Shown: positions 5,984-46,508 of the stretch, in pieces
Position numbering within the stretch: the first letter of the stretch is position 1
Layout of the letters: every line of letters starts with the position of its first letter
Sequence record: NC_019929.1
Length of the DNA stretch: 64,000 nucleotides
Reading direction: 5' to 3' (one strand)
The notes under the pieces: generated by a model
Databases searched by the model: none
Seen by the model: only the letters and a program-made list of their open reading frames with translations
Told to the model about the DNA's origin: nothing
Position numbers and translations under genes: made by a program

Positions 5984-8900
5984 TTAGCCGACCTTGCGTT
6001 GGACGTTCAGCGAAGGTGCGGGTTGAGTGATGGGTTGTTGGCGAGAGGCTGAGCCCGCGGGTGCTTGCCCTTGTGCTTGTGCCTGGTTCCCACCTGTCGA
6101 TAAACCACGACCGGGGTTCGCCTTCATGTAGTCGCGGATTTCTTTCAGATACCCGGCTGACTCTTTCAGGACATTCAGCTGTTGCACATCGACCGGCACG
6201 GTGTTCAGTGTCGGTGTTGATGCTGTAGCGTCTGAACTGTTGGCCGCAGGTTGCTGCGCGGCTTTTTGCAGTTGCTTCTCAGCCCCTGCTTTGACCTTCG
6301 CAACATCCGTTGGTGACAGCCCGTCTGCTGCTGCGGCAGCTGCTACCCCATCCGCAGTGGTCGACGCATCACCTCCGCTGGTACCTGCCCCTGGAGACGG
6401 TACCGCAGGCCCTGCATTCCCTGACGCCGTGGCTTGTGCATCCGCGGCCGCTTGTGCCCCTTTTGCATCCAGTGCGTCATCACGACGAGCTGCGTTATCG
6501 GCAGGCAAGTCGTCTGCCGCCCCGGCAATCGACGGGTCATTAGCCGCACCGGCTGCCACCGCTGGGTTAGCCGGAGACAGGTTCTTCGTCAAATCAGCCG
6601 TCATTCCTGGCGCTGCACTCATCACGTTGGCCGAGACAGCACCCATGCGACGGTTCAACTCCTGAATCACTTCACCGATTGTCCGGTTGCGACCTTGTCC
6701 ATCGTAGAACACCCCTTTGTTCCCTGAGAGAATCGCCGCGGTAATCCCTGGCGCACGCGCCGATGGAGCCGTTGGGTTCTTCTGCCAGGCTTTGAGGAAC
6801 AGTTTACCGCCACCGGCACCGAGGAAGTGGTACAGGTACGCCACCGCTGGCGGTGGTGCTGCGCCACCCAAGTCACGCTGCGCGGAAGCGATGTTGTCAC
6901 GGATAAACTGCATCCCCAGCAGGGTGTTCGCCCACGGGTCAAGTTGCCCGCCGTTACGGTTCAGTTTGTTCGGAATACCAAACTTATTCCCGTGCCCTTT
7001 CATCATGTCGCCCCAGGTTCCGTTAATGAACTGGAACAACCCACCGGCTGACCCGGCACTGTTGGTCACGGTATAGTCGTAGCTTGATTCCGCTTTCGCC
7101 ATTGCCAAGGCAACGGCTGGCGGAACCCCGAACATCTTCGCCGCATCCACAATCATCGACTGGATGGCTTGGACATTCAATGCCCCACGACGACCCAATT
7201 TCTCTATCGGGTACTTCTCCGCTAGAGATTTGTAATCCCCGGCCTGGACTTCCCCGAGACTAATCCCGGACTGACCAGTGGTCATCTTCGCGTAGTTCTC
7301 AATCCCCCCGACCGCATCGACCGATTGTGATAGGTCGTTCGGTGTCCCGTTAAAGCCCGGCGCTGCCGCATAGCCGTTTGCACGGTTTGCCGCATCCGAC
7401 CCTTTCCCGTAGGTTTCAAAGAACTTGCTTTGTGGGTCATCTCCAGAGGTCTGGAAGAAGTTGGTGTTCTTATCACGACGCTGCCATTGGGCACGTTTCC
7501 CAGCAGATTGCGTTTCCTTCAACAGGTTACGCACTGCCAGGTCAGCTTCCTTCGACAACACACGCAAGGTTTCCAACTCTTTGTCGACAGTACGTGGGTC
7601 TGTGTTGGCTTCACCGCCCAATGGGTTGAACGGGATTTCCCACACCGACTGACGTACGCCCCCTTTCAGGTTGTACGCACCACGTACCAGCAAGGCGATT
7701 TCGTACAGATAACCACCCGTCATTTTCAGGTTCAATGGATCACCGGCAGGCAGGTAGCGCTTCACCCCAACGAGGAACGTCATGAAGGCTGGTAAGAAGC
7801 GGCTAAAGAACCACAACTTGTACCTGTCTTCTTTCGGTCCCCCAATGGCGTCAGGTGCCAGCACTGCCACCGCTTTCTTCCAATCCCCTTTGTAACTGGC
7901 AGACTTCGTATCGACGTCTTTGATGACTTCCTTCTCGAAGAGGTTCAACTGCGTACGGGCCGCAGAATCAATCGTCACCAACCCGTACGTTTTCCAACGC
8001 AGGGATTCGAGGGCATCCAAATCTTTCTTGTCTGCCACCGCATTCCAGTCGACCTGAATCTGTACCTGTTCGGTACCGTCTTCCCAGCCTTGGGTTTTGA
8101 TGGTGTTGTCGTTACGCGCCTTATCCAGCGCGGCCAGTTTCTGGGTTGATTCCGCAACCGACGCTGACTTGACCCCATCCACCGCCTCACGCATCCCTTT
8201 CTTCTCAGCGATTTTATCATCAACCAGCCAATCAATCTCTTTCCCTACCCGGTCTTGCACCTTCATCACTTCATCCGCATCCAGCAAGTCCGGTGAGGTG
8301 AAGGTGATGGCATCCCAGGCTTTCGAGAAGAAGCCCTGATTCACTTTACGTGGGTCAGTTAGGGCATGGAAAGCGTTGGCGTCTTTCGACATCTTCACTT
8401 TCGCCCAGAGGCGCTTCTGATCCGCTTTCGAGGTTTTCGATTGGTCAGCCACATCGGCTAACTGGATATCATTGTCCATCGACTTCAAGGCGGTTACCCA
8501 ACGCAGGTAGACCGGCACGAAACGTTGCAGCATGAACGCCTGGAAGGCCAGCATTTCGCCTTTCTCTTCCAGATTCACCCCGTACCCTTCGGCGAGTTTC
8601 TCTACGTCTTTGGCAGCCATACCACGCAAGGTGGCTTGTCCTTTGTCATCGTAGCTGATGTATTGTTTGATGTTGTCTTCGAGGAAGCGGGCTTTTGCAC
8701 CGTCATCGGATGACCAGGCATCGTTGTTGCGATAACCGTACTGGGCCAAACGCATTTTGTCTAAACGCAATGCGGCTTTGTACGTGGCGATATGGTAAGC
8801 CAGCCAGGATGCGCCGACGACAGCAGCCCCGATAGCAATGGCAGGCCAACCGACCGCAGCAACCACCGCAGAGGCGGCTGTGTACAGTCCGGTTGCCACC

Positions 8901-43024: not shown

Positions 43025-43100
43025 AGGGGCATAGCTCAGCTGGCAGAGCACCGGTCTCCAAAACCGGGTGTCCAAGGTTCGAATCCTTGTGCCCCTGCCA
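43025..43100 (+). tRNA. trnW: tRNA-Trp (CCA)
   Basis: AGGGGCA/TGCCCCT acceptor, CCGGT-CTCCAAA-ACCGG anticodon arm, TTCGAAT T-loop, encoded CCA. Confidence 0.95.
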
Positions 43101-43174
43101 AATTTAGCCTGCAAGTTCAGTTCTATCCAAAAGCCAATCTGTCCACTACGGACGCTGCTGATTTGGAGAACACC

Positions 43175-43429
43175 ATGAACTTGTATTTGTTAGAAAGACT
43201 AGACCGTGTGGATTACGACGAGTTTGATTCCATAGTCGTGGCTGCCCCTAACCGGGGTGCCGCGCGCGCAACACGTCCCAGATACGGTCATTGGGCTGGC
43301 TCTTGCTATTGTGACGACGATGTACCGTGTACTTGTGGCTGCGATGACGGCGTACGCCTGAGCGTCACTTGTATCGGTCGTACTGACTTACCGGCAGGAG
43401 TTATCCACGAGTCGTTCTGTGCAGGCTGA
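43175..43429 (+). CDS. Small Cys/Asp-rich hypothetical protein
   Basis: ATG43175 after GGAG; contains CYCDDDVPCTCGCDDG. Confidence 0.7.
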   Translation: MNLYLLERLDRVDYDEFDSIVVAAPNRGAARATRPRYGHWAGSCYCDDDVPCTCGCDDGVRLSVTCIGRTDLPAGVIHESFCAG

Positions 43430-43458
43430 ATACGGTGGGCTTCGGCCCACCACACTTT

Positions 43459-43534
43459 GGGGCGATGGCTCGAGCGGTAAGGCGAGTGATTGCAAATCAC
43501 TTTTAGGCCGGTTCAAATCCGGCTCGTCCCTCCA
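43459..43534 (+). tRNA. trnC: tRNA-Cys (GCA)
   Basis: GGGGCGA/TCGTCCC acceptor, AGTGA-TTGCAAA-TCACT arm, U73 and CCA. Confidence 0.95.
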
Positions 43535-43569
43535 ATTTTTTTCTGAATTCCTGTAGGAACTCAAATCGG

Positions 43570-43737
43570 ATGAAAGCCAAACTTCGTAATTTTGCGTTGC
43601 TGGTTTTCCTGGTGTTGGCCGTATTGTTCTACCTGGCTAAGAATTTTGTGATGCTCGCCGTTGACGTCGCAATAATTCTGATGGTCTTGTGGGTGCTACG
43701 GTCACTCGCTAAACGGGCTTTCCGTCGGAAGGCTTAG
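43570..43737 (+). CDS. 55-aa two-TM membrane protein
   Basis: Hand-translated MKAKLRNFALLVFLVLAVLFYLAKNFVMLAVDVAIILMVLWVLRSLAKRAFRRKA; basic ends, hydrophobic core; not in the ORF track. Confidence 0.65.
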   Translation: MKAKLRNFALLVFLVLAVLFYLAKNFVMLAVDVAIILMVLWVLRSLAKRAFRRKA

Positions 43738-43800
43738 CGAACAGCGGAAACTCCGCTCTGTTGTATCAAACCCTGATATTCACCAGTAGGATAATAAAAC

Positions 43801-44631
43801 ATGAAAAAGCTTTTGGTAGGTTTGTTGGCAATCCTGGCGTTCTCCGCTCACGCTACTGATGTTACCATTACGACGGGCCAGCAAGGTCTGACGTACAACG
43901 CCACGTACGGCGTGAATCTTGCCAGTGCTCTGAATGAGTTCGGCAACAAGTCCACTGTGGTACCGTCGAAAGGTTCCCTGGACAACCTGGACAAAGTTGC
44001 TGCCGGTTCTGCGCAGATTGGTTTTACCCAGGCAGACGCTTTCCAGTTCTGGCGCTCACAGCATCCGAACGAAGCACAGAACGTAGACATCGTTGGCCAG
44101 CTGGGTGACGAGTGTGTCTTCGTGGCTGTCAAGAAAGAAGGTAAGGTTGGCGGTGAAGCCGATCTGAAAGAAGGCATTAAGATTGCGGTCGGTGAACCCG
44201 ACTCTGGTTCTTACGCCAGTTGGCAATACCTGCAAGGTTTGGTGAAGCAATACGCAAAAGCTGAAACCTACGCGAAAGGCGGTATCCGTTCTCTGTCCAA
44301 AGTGGCCACGGGTGAATACGACGCGTTCATGTGGGTAAGCGCACCGGGCAAGAATAACAAATTCCTCGAAGCAGTTAACCAGGATAGCTCTGGTCTGAAA
44401 CTCATCGACATGAACAACTGGAACGTCAACGATAAACTGCCTAACGGGCAAGCAGTCTACGAGAAGAAGTCTGCTAAAGTTGATAACTCTGCGTGGTTCG
44501 GTGGTGATGTGAAAGTGCCGTGCACCAAAACGTTGGTGGTTGCTAATACCGACGCCGGTGACGAACTGCTGGAAGCCGTTTCTACTATCCTCCTCAAGAA
44601 TGCTCCACGCATCATGGGGACGGGTAAGTAA
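43801..44631 (+). CDS. TAXI-family-like periplasmic solute-binding protein
   Basis: Sec signal peptide (MKK...AFSAHA), SKGSLDNLDKVAAGSAQIGFTQAD and IAVGEPDSGS motifs. Confidence 0.75.
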   Translation: MKKLLVGLLAILAFSAHATDVTITTGQQGLTYNATYGVNLASALNEFGNKSTVVPSKGSLDNLDKVAAGSAQIGFTQADAFQFWRSQHPNEAQNVDIVGQLGDECVFVAVKKEGKVGGEADLKEGIKIAVGEPDSGSYASWQYLQGLVKQYAKAETYAKGGIRSLSKVATGEYDAFMWVSAPGKNNKFLEAVNQDSSGLKLIDMNNWNVNDKLPNGQAVYEKKSAKVDNSAWFGGDVKVPCTKTLVVANTDAGDELLEAVSTILLKNAPRIMGTGK

Positions 44632-44649
44632 GTGCTGACGTGTAAAGGG

Positions 44650-45215
44650 CACTGGCTGGGCTGATAACCCCGCCGGGACGGTTTCATCTGAGGGGTTGGG
44701 TGAAGTGAAGAAACGTGGCACACCAATAAGTCCACGTTAACCGGATTGCATAAAGCACTACCTGCGGGTAGGCAATCCTGCCGTCTAACATTATTCGGTG
44801 ATTAAACATGGAAGAGTTGTTCAGAGCGTTTCTGTACCGAATGGGTACCTGGTTGAAAGACCTCAAGCTCTGGAAGCTCGATTGCTATTGGTTATCAGGA
44901 TGTGGGACTGAACGCCATAAACCTGTTTTAGGACGAGAGTCCTCAACCCAGGCGAAGTCCGTTACGGACGAAGGTCAAGCACCGGCCCATTAAGCCGACT
45001 CGCTGACATAGGCAACCTTCACCCCACAATCTGAATGTAACTGATGGGATTGAGTTCCCAGTGTGAAAGAGTAGCAGTGTGCTACTGAGTTCCTCCCTGG
45101 GACTGCTGAGCAGCGAGGGAATAGGGCCAAGAAGAAAGTAAGTAGGGTTGGTGCTTGGAGGCGCTAAGACCGGGGGATACCCTGGCTCAGAAGAAGAAGT
45201 CCATCAACCTCACTT
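44650..45215 (+). ncRNA. Candidate large structured non-coding RNA
   Basis: ~560-nt gap with no convincing gene; nested long-range pairings and many hairpins (see findings). Confidence 0.45.
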
Positions 45216-45218
45216 AAT

Positions 45219-45294
45219 GCGAGTATAGCTCAGCTGGTAGAGCTTCTGGTTCCCAACCAGACGGTCGTGAGTTCGAATCTCATTGCTCGCTCCA
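45219..45294 (+). tRNA. trnG: tRNA-Gly (CCC)
   Basis: GCGAGTA/TGCTCGC acceptor, TCTGG-TTCCCAA-CCAGA arm, CCA. Confidence 0.95.
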
Positions 45295-45403
45295 ACAAAA
45301 TCAATGACTTATAGCGATTTCCCCATTTCGCTACAAGACAACCTAAGTATATGTAAAACAACCAAGACGTGTGCGAATTCGAAGTTGAGTTCTCAGACGT
45401 ATT

Positions 45404-45489
45404 GGCGCGGTACTCAAGTGGTCAACGAGAGCAGACTGTAAATCTGTTGCCTTCGGGCTTCGTAGGTTCAAATCCTTCCCTCGCCACCA
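45404..45489 (+). tRNA. trnY: tRNA-Tyr (GTA)
   Basis: GCAGA-CTGTAAA-TCTGT arm, long variable arm with UUCG, CCA; C:U mismatch in acceptor and U:U in T stem. Confidence 0.9.
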
Positions 45490-45495
45490 ATATTT

Positions 45496-45570
45496 GTTCC
45501 TGTCGTCTAGTGGTAAGGACACCTGGTTTTCAACCAGGCAACCGGAGTTCAATTCTCCGCAGGAACGCCA
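45496..45570 (+). tRNA. trnE: tRNA-Glu (TTC)
   Basis: GTTCCTG/CAGGAAC acceptor, CCTGG-TTTTCAA-CCAGG arm, CCA. Confidence 0.95.
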
Positions 45571-45575
45571 AACAA

Positions 45576-45722
45576 TGACACTGACCCTCGCCGCCATTGA
45601 GCAGCTTAGAGGTCTGGCAGCCAATAAAGGCATCCGTAAGTAACCGTAGCCTTCGGGCGTAGATGGTGAAAGCCGCCAAGTGCAGCCTTAGAACTCCGTG
45701 GGATTCGGAGGAGTGTCACCCA
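45576..45722 (+). ncRNA. 147-nt tRNA-shaped RNA with extended anticodon-position arm
   Basis: TGACACT/AGTGTCA terminal stem plus C-CCA end; T-like arm CTCCG-TGGGATT-CGGAG; 64-nt arm closed by TGGCAGC/GCCGCCA. Confidence 0.6.
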
Positions 45723-45726
45723 TTTT

Positions 45727-45804
45727 AGGATTGTAGCTCAGTTGGTCTAGAGTGCCGCCCTGTCACGGCGGAGGTCGCGGGTTCGAGCCCCGTCAGTCCT
45801 GCCA
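45727..45804 (+). tRNA. trnD: tRNA-Asp (GTC)
   Basis: CCGCC-CTGTCAC-GGCGG arm, CCA. Confidence 0.95.
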
Positions 45805-45813
45805 TTTTTAAAT

Positions 45814-45889
45814 TGCGTCTTAGCTCAGTTGGTAGAGCGCACCCCTGATAAGGGTGAGGTCACTGGTTCAAGTCCAGTAGATGCAACCA
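45814..45889 (+). tRNA. trnI: tRNA-Ile (GAT)
   Basis: CACCC-CTGATAA-GGGTG arm, CCA. Confidence 0.95.
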
Positions 45890-45895
45890 GTATTC

Positions 45896-45971
45896 GGTTC
45901 TGTAGCTTAGCTGGTAGAGCACGCCACTCATAATGGCGCGGTCGTTGGTTCGAATCCAGCCAGAACCACCA
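45896..45971 (+). tRNA. tRNA with CAT anticodon (Ile2-like or elongator Met)
   Basis: GGTTCTG/CAGAACC acceptor (G1-C72, so not initiator), CGCCA-CTCATAA-TGGCG arm, A73, CCA; resembles enterobacterial tRNA-Ile2. Confidence 0.9.
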
Positions 45972-45978
45972 TTTCAAC

Positions 45979-46056
45979 GGTGTATGTAGTTCAGCTGGTT
46001 AGAATACTGGCTTGTGACGTCAGTGGTCGAGAGTTCGAGTCTCTCCATACACCCCA
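45979..46056 (+). tRNA. trnH: tRNA-His (GTG)
   Basis: G-1:C73 8-bp acceptor GGTGTATG/CATACACC, CTGGC-TTGTGAC-GTCAG arm, CCA. Confidence 0.95.
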
Positions 46057-46061
46057 ATTCT

Positions 46062-46151
46062 GGAGAATTGTCCGAGAGGCTTAAAGAGCTCCCCTGCTAA
46101 GGGAGTGGTGGCGAAAGCTGCCCGTGTGTTCGAATCACACATTCTCCGCCA
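46062..46151 (+). tRNA. trnS: tRNA-Ser (GCT)
   Basis: CTCCC-CTGCTAA-GGGAG arm, long variable arm, G73, CCA. Confidence 0.95.
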
Positions 46152-46157
46152 AACAAT

Positions 46158-46277
46158 AGTCGCCTAGCTCAAGATTAGAGCACACCTTACGACCAATACT
46201 GACCAACACGCACCGCGGTGCAATAATGGCGGTGGCGTGATGTGCGGTTACCGGTTCAAGTCCGGTGGTGACTTCCC
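46158..46277 (+). ncRNA. tRNA-like RNA with 62-nt anticodon arm (no anticodon loop)
   Basis: Canonical acceptor AGTCGCC/GGTGACT, D arm GCTC/GAGC and T arm ACCGG-TTCAAGT-CCGGT; anticodon arm expanded (46183..46244); ends TCCC. Confidence 0.7.
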
Positions 46278-46283
46278 TATAAT

Positions 46284-46348
46284 GGCTACTCCCGGTCGGT
46301 CTGGGGTCGTCTGTAAAGACGAGGATGGTTCAAATCCGTCAGTGGCAA
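46284..46348 (+). ncRNA. Compact degenerate tRNA-Tyr-like element
   Basis: GCTACT/AGTGGC stem, CCCGG/CTGGG arm, TCGTC-TGTAAA-GACGA arm, GATGG-TTCAAAT-CCGTC T arm; 1-nt variable region, no CCA. Confidence 0.45.
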
Positions 46349-46349
46349 G

Positions 46350-46421
46350 AGCGATGCTGTTAAGATGGTTAACACCCGACTCATAATCGGATATTCGCAG
46401 GTTCGATTCCTGTCATCGTTC
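46350..46421 (+). tRNA. trnM: Atypical tRNA-Met (CAT)
   Basis: AGCGATG/CATCGTT acceptor, GTTA/TAAC D stem, CCCGA-CTCATAA-TCGGA arm with C:A mismatch, GCAGG-TTCGATT-CCTGT T arm; CCA not encoded. Confidence 0.75.
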
Positions 46422-46431
46422 GCCCTATTTT

Positions 46432-46508
46432 GGTTCCATAGCTCAGTTGGTTAGAGCGGCTGCCTGTTAAGCAGTAGGTCCCTGGTTCGAGTCCAGGTGG
46501 TACCGCCA
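46432..46508 (+). tRNA. trnN: tRNA-Asn (GTT)
   Basis: GCTGC-CTGTTAA-GCAGT arm, G73, CCA; U:U mismatch in acceptor. Confidence 0.95.

What the first reader, a model, noticed from the sequence alone, without database searches (positions are those of the whole stretch)
46158..46277. tRNA body with textbook D and T arms whose anticodon loop is replaced by a long hairpin
Seen: the acceptor, D arm (GCTC-AAGATTA-GAGC), 5-nt variable loop and T arm (TTCAAGT) are canonical. The anticodon arm is 62 nt (CAC/GTG, TTACG/CGTGA, CCA/TGG, apical GCAC-CGCG-GTGC), almost the same length as the 64-nt arm of the 45576 element, although the sequences differ. Removing an insert at 37/38 gives no normal U33 loop. 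Inference: a deliberate anticodon-less tRNA mimic, or a tRNA with a short intron-like insert of a type not known to be spliced in bacteria. Two independent elements with the same architecture suggest selection.
Basis: partly seen in the sequence, partly recalled or inferred. Interest (0 to 1): 0.7.

Follow-up and report, generated by a model that had tools for sequence, protein, structure and literature searches.

The report
Phage tRNA gene split by hairpin
A jumbo fire-blight phage carries a well-conserved tRNA-shaped gene whose anticodon loop is interrupted by a 48-base hairpin-forming insert, so it is probably a non-decoding tRNA look-alike, or less likely a tRNA with an intron of a type not known to be spliced in bacteria.

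Summary
The window is Erwinia phage phiEaH2, a 243-kb jumbo phage. The element at 46158-46277 is real. It has a complete tRNA frame, and a frame descriptor gave 1 hit in the window against 0 in 100 shuffles.

Removing 46193-46240, exactly between positions 37 and 38, leaves the loop UUACGA+U. That loop has U33, anticodon ACG and A37, as in tRNA-Arg(ACG). The element also follows tRNA-Ser(GCU), as argV follows serV in E. coli. The remaining anticodon stem has only 3 bp here and 4 bp in relatives.

The insert and stem can form a 21-22 bp rod in which the anticodon bases pair with the end of the insert. A second fold has nearly the same energy.

Every Erskinevirus-like genome or contig found carries the element, with only three variable sites. 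All three keep the rod. Neighbouring tRNA-Ser differs by 9-14%.

Asesino has a paralog with a similar rod and no usable anticodon. Related jumbo phages carry other tRNA look-alikes without an anticodon.

- Best reading (0.45): a stable, non-decoding, tRNA-shaped RNA.
- Rival (0.25): an intron-bearing tRNA-Arg, like the unexplained inserts in Lak megaphage tRNAs.
- Rival (0.2): a decaying tRNA gene.

No expression data could be obtained.

The parts
46158..46164 (+). Acceptor stem, 5' strand (AGTCGCC). It is preceded by U at -1.
   Evidence: Pairs 7/7 with 46267-46273. The Asesino paralog shows compensatory changes in this stem.
46165..46182 (+). U8, A9, the D arm (GCTC / AAGATTA / GAGC) and A26. 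The D loop has a single G and ends GAUUA.
   Evidence: E. coli argV has GGAUA at this place. The other tRNAs of the cluster have U after the G's.
46183..46186 (+). Anticodon stem, 5' strand (CACC). In phiEaH2 only CAC is paired.
   Evidence: The relatives carry an extra G on the 3' strand that pairs with C46186.
46187..46192 (+). Relic or true anticodon-loop positions 32-37: U U A C G A (U33, anticodon ACG, A37).
   Evidence: ARAGORN with introns allowed, on the Asesino-type copy. Together with U38, 5 of 7 positions match the E. coli argV loop.
46193..46240 (+). The 48-nt insert between positions 37 and 38. Its last five bases (46236-40) pair with UUACG. Inside it lie helices ACUG/CGGU, CCA/UGG and GCAC/GUGC capped by CGCG. 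An alternative 10-bp helix joins 46207-16 to 46229-39.
   Evidence: The first 46 nt are invariant in all lineages seen. No other copy was found in the phage genome, IMG/VR or GTDB genomes.
46239..46241 (+). The only variable sites: G>A at 46239, A>G at 46240, and +G after 46241.
   Evidence: Opposite U46188 and U46187 the three variants read G/A, A/G and A/A, and all of these pair. The added G pairs with C46186.
46241..46244 (+). U38 and the 3' strand of the anticodon stem (GUG; GGUG in relatives).
46245..46266 (+). Variable loop CGGUU and the T arm (ACCGG / UUCAAGU / CCGGU).
   Evidence: The T arm is closest to Ile-type tRNAs. The variable loop resembles that of argV, CGGUC.
46267..46277 (+). 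Acceptor stem 3' strand (GGTGACT), discriminator U and CCC.
   Evidence: Sequence conservation ends here: three different downstream sequences follow in three lineages. Position 46277 is T in one relative.
46062..46151 (+). tRNA-Ser(GCU), directly upstream with a 6-nt spacer.
   Evidence: It aligns closely with E. coli serV, which is followed 3 nt later by argV, the tRNA-Arg(ACG) gene.

Best explanation
The element is a tRNA-derived gene. Its loop, D loop, variable loop and position after tRNA-Ser(GCU) resemble tRNA-Arg(ACG). Its T arm and stem resemble tRNA-Ile. A 48-nt insert between positions 37 and 38 has turned the anticodon arm into a 21-22 bp irregular rod.

I think the RNA is made as part of the tRNA-cluster transcript. 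RNase P would then cut it out at A46158, the 3' end would be trimmed to UCC, and the CCA-adding enzyme would complete it. It would then persist unspliced as a stable, L-shaped RNA that cannot decode.

The acceptor/T-arm end could engage proteins that handle tRNA ends. The rod hides the former anticodon and keeps the molecule out of decoding. The most likely use is as a decoy or competitor for a factor that binds or attacks tRNAs, or as a tRNA scaffold that stabilises the rod.

Shown: the anatomy, the conservation and the existence of relatives. Inferred: transcription, processing, stability and function.
For: - The tRNA frame is complete and far beyond chance. The nucleotides used for tRNA tertiary contacts (U8, A14, A15 with U48, A21, G53-C61, the T loop) are readable.
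- The element is a discrete conserved module. It differs by 3 events in 120 nt between phiEaH2 and Asesino and shows the same few changes in Logan contigs. The adjacent tRNA-Ser differs by 9-14%, and the flanks diverge at once.
- The insert is at least as conserved as the 'exons': no change in its first 46 nt.
- All three variable sites keep or improve the rod, and they weaken the alternative helix.
- An Asesino paralog (L002:2110-2230) has the same frame, with compensatory changes in the acceptor and T stems. It ends ACCA, has a rod of about 20-22 bp, and has no loop with U33 and a purine at 37.
- Related phages keep other tRNA look-alikes without an anticodon. One family sits directly before tRNA(CAU) in seven phages. 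Its acceptor and T stems covary, while its middle parts differ widely and range over 65-108 nt in total. Two 300-kb phages have tRNA-like genes with hairpins placed at other positions of the anticodon loop.
- After hypothetical splicing the anticodon stem would have 4 bp (3 bp in phiEaH2). The stretch between the D and T stems would be 21 nt, 1-2 nt short of a normal tRNA.
- No RNA ligase, polynucleotide kinase or splicing endonuclease is annotated in phiEaH2. The annotated 'ribonuclease' has an RNase H domain.
- Phage T4 has a precedent: species 1 RNA (rnaC) lies in its tRNA cluster and has an acceptor stem and T arm but no anticodon.
Against: - There is no evidence that the RNA accumulates or in what form. 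The only runs holding it are assembled contigs, and the one labelled RNA is probably DNA.
- The insert lies exactly at the canonical intron position and leaves a good Arg(ACG) loop, which is what an intron would look like.
- Only three sequence variants exist, so there is no two-sided covariation for the rod.
- Two folds of the arm are nearly isoenergetic in phiEaH2.
- Identity between phiEaH2 and Asesino is mosaic. tRNA-His is 100% identical, so recent exchange rather than selection could explain part of the conservation.
- The paralog is absent from a close Asesino-like contig, so such elements can be lost.
- No binding partner or target was found.
Confidence: 0.45

Rival explanations
1. It is an intron-containing tRNA-Arg(ACG). 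The 48-nt insert would be cut out at the two one-base bulges (A37 and U38) that flank the 5-bp anticodon-insert helix. A host or phage RNA ligase would then join the halves, giving a tRNA of about 73 nt that decodes CGN codons.
For: - The insert is exactly at 37/38. The joined loop UUACGAU has U33, ACG (the one natural A34 anticodon in bacteria) and A37.
- 5 of 7 loop positions, the variable loop and the GAU(U)A end of the D loop match E. coli argV.
- The gene follows tRNA-Ser(GCU), as argV follows serV.
- The anticodon pairs with the 3' end of the insert, and both junctions lie at bulges. This is the layout of archaeal and eukaryal pre-tRNAs.
- The cluster has no other Arg tRNA.
- Lak megaphage tRNAs carry conserved inserts at 37/38 whose removal is also unexplained (PMC6784885).
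Against: - The mature anticodon stem would have 4 bp, and only 3 bp in phiEaH2 and Stratton, although the rest of the gene is unchanged there.
- The bulges are 1 nt and the central helix is 5 bp, not the 3-4-3 of a bulge-helix-bulge motif.
- The insert is too short for a group I intron, and no known ribozyme matches it.
- No ligase or endonuclease is annotated in the phage. A review reports RNA repair genes as less common in the nucleus-forming jumbo-phage group (PMC7824862). That phiEaH2 belongs to that group is my assumption from its phiKZ/SPN3US-like relatives; it was not checked here.
- The insert does not evolve faster than the exons.
- The paralog cannot give a usable loop.
- Overall the joined sequence is closer to tRNA-Ile (68%) than to argV (58%).
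- The discriminator is U and the tail is CCC.
- ARAGORN with introns assigns different anticodons to the two variants, and GenBank says Ile(aat).
Confidence: 0.25
2. It is a dead tRNA gene. A tRNA-Arg-like copy was broken by an insertion and a stem deletion, and it persists only through recent shared ancestry or exchange between co-infecting phages.
For: - These clusters are full of odd and variable tRNA-like pieces that come and go between close relatives.
- The paralog is present in Asesino but not in a close relative.
- phiEaH2 has lost one more stem pair.
- Identity between the two phage species is mosaic.
Against: - Every structural feature of the frame is intact (7/7, 4/4 and 5/5 pairs, and the T loop).
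- There are 3 changes in 120 nt, against 16.5% divergence in the downstream non-coding DNA and 10% in tRNA-Ser next door.
- All changes are compatible with the rod.
- The element is kept in four different neighbourhoods.
Confidence: 0.2
3. The rod is the active part. It would be a two-turn double-stranded RNA displayed on, or released from, a tRNA scaffold, for example as an RNase III substrate or a small regulatory RNA.
For: - The rod sequence is invariant.
- The target and its paralog have rods of similar length.
- Engineered tRNA scaffolds with RNA placed in the anticodon stem are processed and stable in E. coli (PMC3753655, listed).
Against: - No complementary target beyond chance was found in the 243-kb phage genome.
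- The rod sequences of target and paralog differ.
- The host genome could not be searched.
Confidence: 0.1

Closest known systems
Inserts in Lak megaphage tRNA genes (Devoto et al. 2019, PMC6784885)
   Same: A tRNA gene of a very large phage is interrupted after position 37. The insert sequence is almost identical between variants. There is no known splicing route, and standard bacterial tRNA finders miss or miscall the gene.
   Different: The one Lak example shown (tRNA-Tyr) keeps a normal 5-bp anticodon stem, and its insert is longer (93 nt). Here the stem is short and the insert forms one continuous rod with it. The hosts and phage lineages are unrelated.
Phage T4 species 1 and species 2 stable RNAs (rnaC, rnaD)
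   Same: They are encoded inside the phage tRNA cluster. rnaC has an acceptor-type stem and a textbook T arm but no anticodon loop, and its length is 119-139 nt. The T4 record gives no function beyond 'small, stable RNA'.
   Different: There is no sequence similarity. rnaC has a 5' extension and a different middle part. The T4 record describes these RNAs as stable, whereas nothing is known here about accumulation.
Archaeal and eukaryal pre-tRNA introns (bulge-helix-bulge, position 37/38)
   Same: The position is 37/38, the anticodon pairs with the insert, and both junctions lie at bulges on opposite strands.
   Different: The bulges are 1 nt instead of 3, and the central helix is 5 bp instead of 4. 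The organism is a phage of a bacterium, and no splicing endonuclease is known or annotated there.
Group I introns in bacterial and phage tRNA genes
   Same: An interruption of the anticodon loop of a bacterial-type tRNA gene.
   Different: At 48 nt the insert is far below the size of a group I core. Rfam finds nothing.
Engineered tRNA scaffolds (RNA inserted in the anticodon stem; PMC3753655)
   Same: A tRNA body carries a foreign structured RNA where the anticodon loop was. The purpose is to obtain tRNA-type processing and stability.
   Different: That system is man-made. Here it is natural, and the payload is unknown.
tmRNA tRNA-like domain and bacterial Y RNA (YrlA)
   Same: tRNA mimicry in which a long helix stands in for the anticodon arm.
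   Different: ARAGORN finds no tmRNA. There is no G3-U70, and the D stem is complete. YrlA matches in this cluster are weak and span neighbouring true tRNAs, not this element. From my own knowledge, YrlA is circularly permuted relative to this RNA.

Membership tests
Canonical decoding tRNA | Cloverleaf frame with 7-bp acceptor, D arm, T arm and conserved tertiary nucleotides | tested here: met
   The exception is a single G in place of G18G19.
Canonical decoding tRNA | 5-bp anticodon stem closing a 7-nt loop with U33 | tested here: not met
   The primary sequence has a 62-nt arm. Even with the insert removed the stem has 3 bp (phiEaH2) or 4 bp (relatives).
Canonical decoding tRNA | Recognised by tRNA models | tested here: not met
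   Default ARAGORN and Rfam RF00005 give no hit, even at E up to 10.
tRNA-Arg(ACG) | Loop with U33-A34-C35-G36-A37, an A20-type D loop, and argV-like context | tested here: inconclusive
   The loop, the variable loop, the end of the D loop and the synteny with tRNA-Ser(GCU) fit. Overall identity is higher to tRNA-Ile, and the discriminator is U.
Group I intron in tRNA | Insert of about 200 nt or more with a conserved catalytic core | tested here: not met
   The insert is 48 nt and no Rfam intron or ribozyme matches it.
Bulge-helix-bulge intron | Two 3-nt bulges separated by a 4-bp helix | tested here: not met
   1-nt bulges and a 5-bp helix in the rod fold.
Bulge-helix-bulge intron | Splicing endonuclease and RNA ligase available | tested here: inconclusive
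   None is annotated among 262 phiEaH2 genes, but most of them are 'hypothetical'. The host was not searched.
Lak-type phage tRNA insert | Insert after position 37 of a phage tRNA gene, conserved between variants | tested here: met
Lak-type phage tRNA insert | Exons that join into a normal tRNA | tested here: not met
   The anticodon stem is short, and the stretch between the D and T stems is 21 nt, 1-2 nt short of a normal tRNA.
T4 species 1-type stable RNA | tRNA-like RNA without an anticodon, encoded in a phage tRNA cluster | tested here: met
T4 species 1-type stable RNA | Accumulates as a stable processed RNA | not testable with these tools
   No RNA reads were available.
tmRNA | tRNA-Ala-like domain with G3-U70 and a tag reading frame | tested here: not met
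   ARAGORN finds no tmRNA. Pair 3-70 is U-A.

The most novel reading that the evidence does not exclude
The insert is a true intron removed by proteins (cuts at the two bulges, then ligation) in a bacterial cell infected by a cultured phage. That would be the first tractable case of non-self-splicing tRNA splicing outside archaea and eukaryotes. It would probably also explain the unexplained Lak megaphage tRNA inserts.
Probability: 0.2. Interest if true: 0.9.

Novelty: new variant of a known kind. Interest (0 to 1): 0.55.

Why it matters
Phage tRNA clusters are usually read as codon-supply or anti-defence spare parts. This phage group also keeps several tRNA-shaped genes that cannot decode, and nobody has explained such RNAs since T4 species 1 RNA was described.

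This element is the cleanest case among them. It has an intact tRNA frame, a defined insert at the classical intron position, natural variants and a paralog. It also sits in cultured phages of a workable host.

A single Northern blot or tRNA-seq experiment would decide between a tRNA mimic and a new kind of bacterial tRNA splicing. It would also correct database entries: the element is unannotated in phiEaH2 and is called tRNA-Ile(aat) in Stratton and Asesino.

Tried and rejected
- **Known RNA families.** Group I intron, small ribozymes, tmRNA and Y RNA gave no Rfam or ARAGORN support.
- **Mobile hairpin or repeat.** The insert has no other copy in the window, the fetched loci or the whole phiEaH2 genome. 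A 22-mer from it finds only the two Erskinevirus contigs in IMG/VR and nothing in GTDB genomes.
- **Bacterial origin of the whole element.** The D-arm/T-arm pattern finds nothing in GTDB genomes and one phage contig in metagenomes.
- **Antisense target in the phage.** The best complementary run is 13 nt, which is chance level.
- **Promoter inside the insert.** There is a sigma-70-like site at 46199-46227. The region has 6 such sites against 2.4 expected, so I treat it as chance.
- **Uninterrupted ortholog.** blastn of each half, and of E. coli argV, against 50,697 phage records found none in related phages.
- **RNA evidence.** The runs that hold the element are assembled contigs. The 'RNA?' run is flagged as probably DNA. 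No joined form was seen, but contigs cannot show absence.
- **Genes near the cluster.** A Pfam scan of ten flanking proteins found no RNA enzyme.
- **Paralog in IMG/VR.** No hit.
- **ARAGORN anticodon calls.** They are unstable: gcg, acg, and aat in GenBank. I gave them no weight as identity calls.

Full report
**Where this is.** The window matches Erwinia phage phiEaH2 at 100% identity (243,050 bp, genus Erskinevirus, a jumbo phage). Window position 1 is record position 124,001. The finding lies inside a cluster of 12 tRNA genes called by ARAGORN, at 43025-46508. The phiEaH2 record annotates no tRNA at all in this stretch. In the near-identical phage Stratton and in the sister species Asesino, the same element is annotated as a 120-121 nt 'tRNA-Ile(aat)'.

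- The acceptor strands 46158-64 and 46267-73 pair at 7 of 7 positions.
- U8 and A9, a 4-bp D stem with a 7-nt loop, A26, a 5-nt variable loop and a 5-bp T stem with loop TTCAAGT are all present.
- A descriptor asking for these features in elements of 95-160 nt found this element and nothing else in the window. It found nothing in 100 dinucleotide-preserving shuffles.
- The whole 120 nt folds better than every one of 200 shuffles, with z = -3.0.

Three details depart from 'textbook'. The D loop has one G where G18G19 should be. The 3' tail is U-CCC rather than N-CCA. Default ARAGORN and the Rfam tRNA model do not see the gene at all.

**The arm.** Folded alone, the 62 nt at 46183-46244 give two competing structures of nearly equal energy.
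That makes 21 bp at -20.3 kcal/mol.
- *The alternative.* A 10-bp helix joins 46207-16 to 46229-39 and leaves the 5' third of the arm single-stranded, at -20.5 kcal/mol.

**Natural variants.** Variation exists at only three places.
- Asesino, an IMG/VR contig, a metagenome contig and two Logan runs read AG at 46239-40 and carry an extra G after 46241.
- A third Logan run reads AA with the same extra G.
- In the rod, the bases opposite U46188 and U46187 are therefore G/A, A/G or A/A. All of these pair. The extra G pairs with C46186.
- With these changes the rod becomes the minimum-energy fold of the arm, at -22.7 and -23.0 kcal/mol. In the alternative fold, the change at 46239 breaks a C-G pair.

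This favours the rod. But these are one-sided purine changes opposite U, not two-sided covariation.

ARAGORN with introns allowed, run on the Asesino-type copy, removes 48 nt and leaves a 4-bp stem (CACC/GGUG) closing the loop U-U-A-C-G-A-U. In window coordinates the insert is 46193-46240, between A37 (46192) and U38 (46241). So the loop does have U33, a purine at 37, and the anticodon ACG.

In E. coli K-12, serV (tRNA-Ser GCU) is followed 3 nt later by argV (tRNA-Arg ACG). Here tRNA-Ser(GCU) aligns closely with serV, and the element follows it after 6 nt. The element shares several features with argV:
- 5 of 7 loop positions;
- the variable loop (CGGUU against CGGUC);
- the D stem;
- the GAU(U)A end of the D loop.

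By contrast, the T arm and the anticodon stem look like Ile tRNAs. Over its full length the joined sequence is 68% identical to the phage tRNA-Ile(GAU) and only 58% to argV.

I therefore call it tRNA-derived, with an Arg(ACG)-type loop and context. I do not press the ancestry further.

What is abnormal is the stem. One base pair is missing relative to any standard tRNA, and phiEaH2 and Stratton lack a second. In the rod fold, the anticodon bases pair with the last five bases of the insert, and A37 and U38 are single-base bulges at the two junctions. That is the layout of archaeal and eukaryal pre-tRNAs, but not their 3-4-3 geometry.

**Conservation.** Between phiEaH2 and Asesino the modules of this cluster range from 100% identity (His) to about 81% (Ile).

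| Module | Identity, phiEaH2 vs Asesino |
|---|---|
| tRNA-His | 100% |
| This element | 97.5% |
| tRNA-Ser (next to the element) | 90% |
| Non-coding DNA downstream | 83.5% |
| Next protein gene | 75% |

- In the relative seen in run X37, tRNA-Ser has 13 differences in 94 nt, and 101 nt are inserted between tRNA-Ser and the element. The element itself shows two changes and one indel.
- In run X38, tRNA-Ser shows 8 differences and the element the same three events, plus C>T at 46277.
- Downstream of ...UCCC the three available genomes continue with three unrelated sequences.

The element is thus kept intact as a unit while its surroundings are reshuffled. The first 46 nt of the insert never change. 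This argues for constraint on the insert as well as the body. The mosaic pattern means that recent exchange cannot be excluded.

**Relatives.**
- *A paralog.* My descriptor found a second, unannotated element in Asesino (L002:2110-2230) between tRNA-Asp and tRNA-Ile. Its acceptor (AGUCACU/AGUGGCU) and T stem (ACAGG/CCUGU) differ from the target by compensatory changes. Its D loop ends GGAUA, as in argV, and it ends A-CCA. Its arm is a rod of about 20-22 bp of a different sequence, in which a relic UUAC again pairs with GUAA. It has no loop with U33 and a purine at 37, and ARAGORN with introns does not call it. It is absent from a close Asesino-like contig and from IMG/VR.
- *A family before tRNA(CAU).* Seven related phages, phiEaH2 included, carry a tRNA-like gene directly fused to the tRNA(CAU) gene (46284-46348 here). 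Its acceptor and T stems covary richly. Its middle ranges from a 6-nt loop hairpin to a 47-nt rod capped by GAAA in Salmonella phage SPAsTU.
- *Hairpins at other loop positions.* Two 300-kb phage contigs have tRNA-like genes with hairpins inserted at other positions of the anticodon loop.
- *T4.* The 3' domain of phage T4 rnaC (species 1 RNA) is likewise a tRNA frame without an anticodon.
It is a further and more widespread family, with a covarying acceptor stem, one T-like hairpin and CCA, but no D arm. It does not share this element's architecture.

**What it most likely is.** I weigh three readings.

*(a) A non-decoding, tRNA-shaped RNA (0.45).* This fits:
- the conserved insert;
- the paralog;
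- the company of other look-alikes without an anticodon;
- the short stem;
- the lack of any annotated splicing or RNA-repair enzyme in phiEaH2.

A comparative review notes that RNA repair genes are less common in the nucleus-forming jumbo-phage group (PMC7824862). That phiEaH2 belongs to that group is my assumption from its relatives; I did not check it.

The processing route is inferred from what is established for E. coli tRNA maturation: RNase P cuts at a site with U at -1 and a C74-C75 tail, exonucleases trim the 3' end, and the CCA-adding enzyme adds A76. What all these families share is the acceptor/T-arm half and the 3' end. I therefore suspect that they engage, or distract, something that acts on tRNA ends. 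The rod keeps this one off the ribosome's decoding site. This last step is speculation.

*(b) An intron-bearing tRNA-Arg(ACG) (0.25).* The position, the loop, the anticodon-insert pairing, the synteny and the Lak megaphage precedent (PMC6784885) support it. Against it stand:
- the 4-bp or 3-bp stem;
- the missing machinery;
- the conserved insert;
- the paralog.

*(c) A decaying gene (0.2).* The turnover of odd tRNA-like pieces in these clusters fits this. The intact frame and the low divergence do not.

*A variant of (a) (0.1).* Here the rod is the payload on a tRNA scaffold. It has no support beyond the invariance of the rod. No target was found in the phage genome.

**Limits.** No RNA reads were available, so expression, ends and splicing are untested. 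Only three sequence variants exist. The check for RNA enzymes rests on product names and a few Pfam scans, and the host genome was not searched.

**Verdict.** The feature is real, conserved and mis-annotated. It is a new variant of two poorly understood known things: phage tRNA genes with unexplained inserts, and stable tRNA-like RNAs of phage tRNA clusters. Its function is unresolved but can be tested directly.

Noticed in passing
window 45576-45722: A structured RNA family with a covarying 7-bp acceptor-type stem, a conserved T-like hairpin (CUCCG-UGNNAUU-CGGAG) and an encoded CCA. Its interior varies (110-154 nt). It has no D arm. It is present in Asesino, Kwan, SPAsTU, pEa_SNUABM_10, pSal-SNUABM-04 and Huxley, and is unannotated everywhere.
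   Followed up: partly
window 46284-46348: A 65-nt tRNA-like gene fused with no spacer to the next tRNA(CAU). It has a G-A mismatch at pair 1-72 and a 6-nt loop where the anticodon loop should be. Homologs lie before tRNA(CAU) in six other phages. Their acceptor and T stems carry many compensatory changes, and their middles differ widely (65-108 nt overall).
   Followed up: partly
window 46349-46424: The tRNA(CAU) scores low against the Rfam model (44 bits), lacks U8 in the Rfam frame, and ends G-CCC instead of CCA. ARAGORN and Rfam disagree by one base on its start, and the ARAGORN frame would give a G3-U70 pair.
   Followed up: no
L003:2808-2903 (ChrisDB): The ChrisDB copy of this tRNA(CAU) carries a 10-bp hairpin in its variable region and has a degenerate D arm.
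   Followed up: no
L002:2323-2405 (Asesino) and L007:3375-3446 (minus strand): Two further unannotated tRNA-like pieces. One has acceptor GGGAACA/TGTTCCC followed by C-CCA and no T arm. The other lies between the target and tRNA(CAU) in an IMG/VR contig and has a T-like arm with loop TTAGAAT.
   Followed up: no
L078:8121-8222 and 8600-8707; L080:7503-7604 and 8120-8227: Two roughly 300-kb IMG/VR phage contigs have tRNA-like genes ending A-CCA. A normal 5-bp anticodon stem closes a large loop that holds a 6-10 bp hairpin, inserted at positions other than 37/38.
   Followed up: partly
window 43025-46508: The cluster holds all four tRNAs with GUN anticodons (Tyr, His, Asn, Asp), the set that carries queuosine in bacteria. 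It has no annotated Arg, Lys or Leu tRNA.
   Followed up: no
window 45570-45576, 46152-46157, and several loci: The spacer AACAAT after an encoded CCA recurs before tRNA-like elements: 45576, the target, the Huxley and pSal-SNUABM-04 look-alikes, and ChrisDB tRNA-Glu.
   Followed up: no
NC_019929 / JX316028, whole record: The phiEaH2 records annotate no tRNA genes at all. Stratton labels the tRNA-Asp(GUC) at the equivalent of 45727-45804 as tRNA-His.
   Followed up: no
L020:12552-14793 (phiEaH2 62552-64793): Two adjacent genes for radical SAM domain proteins, gp083 and gp084. Their role is unknown.
   Followed up: no
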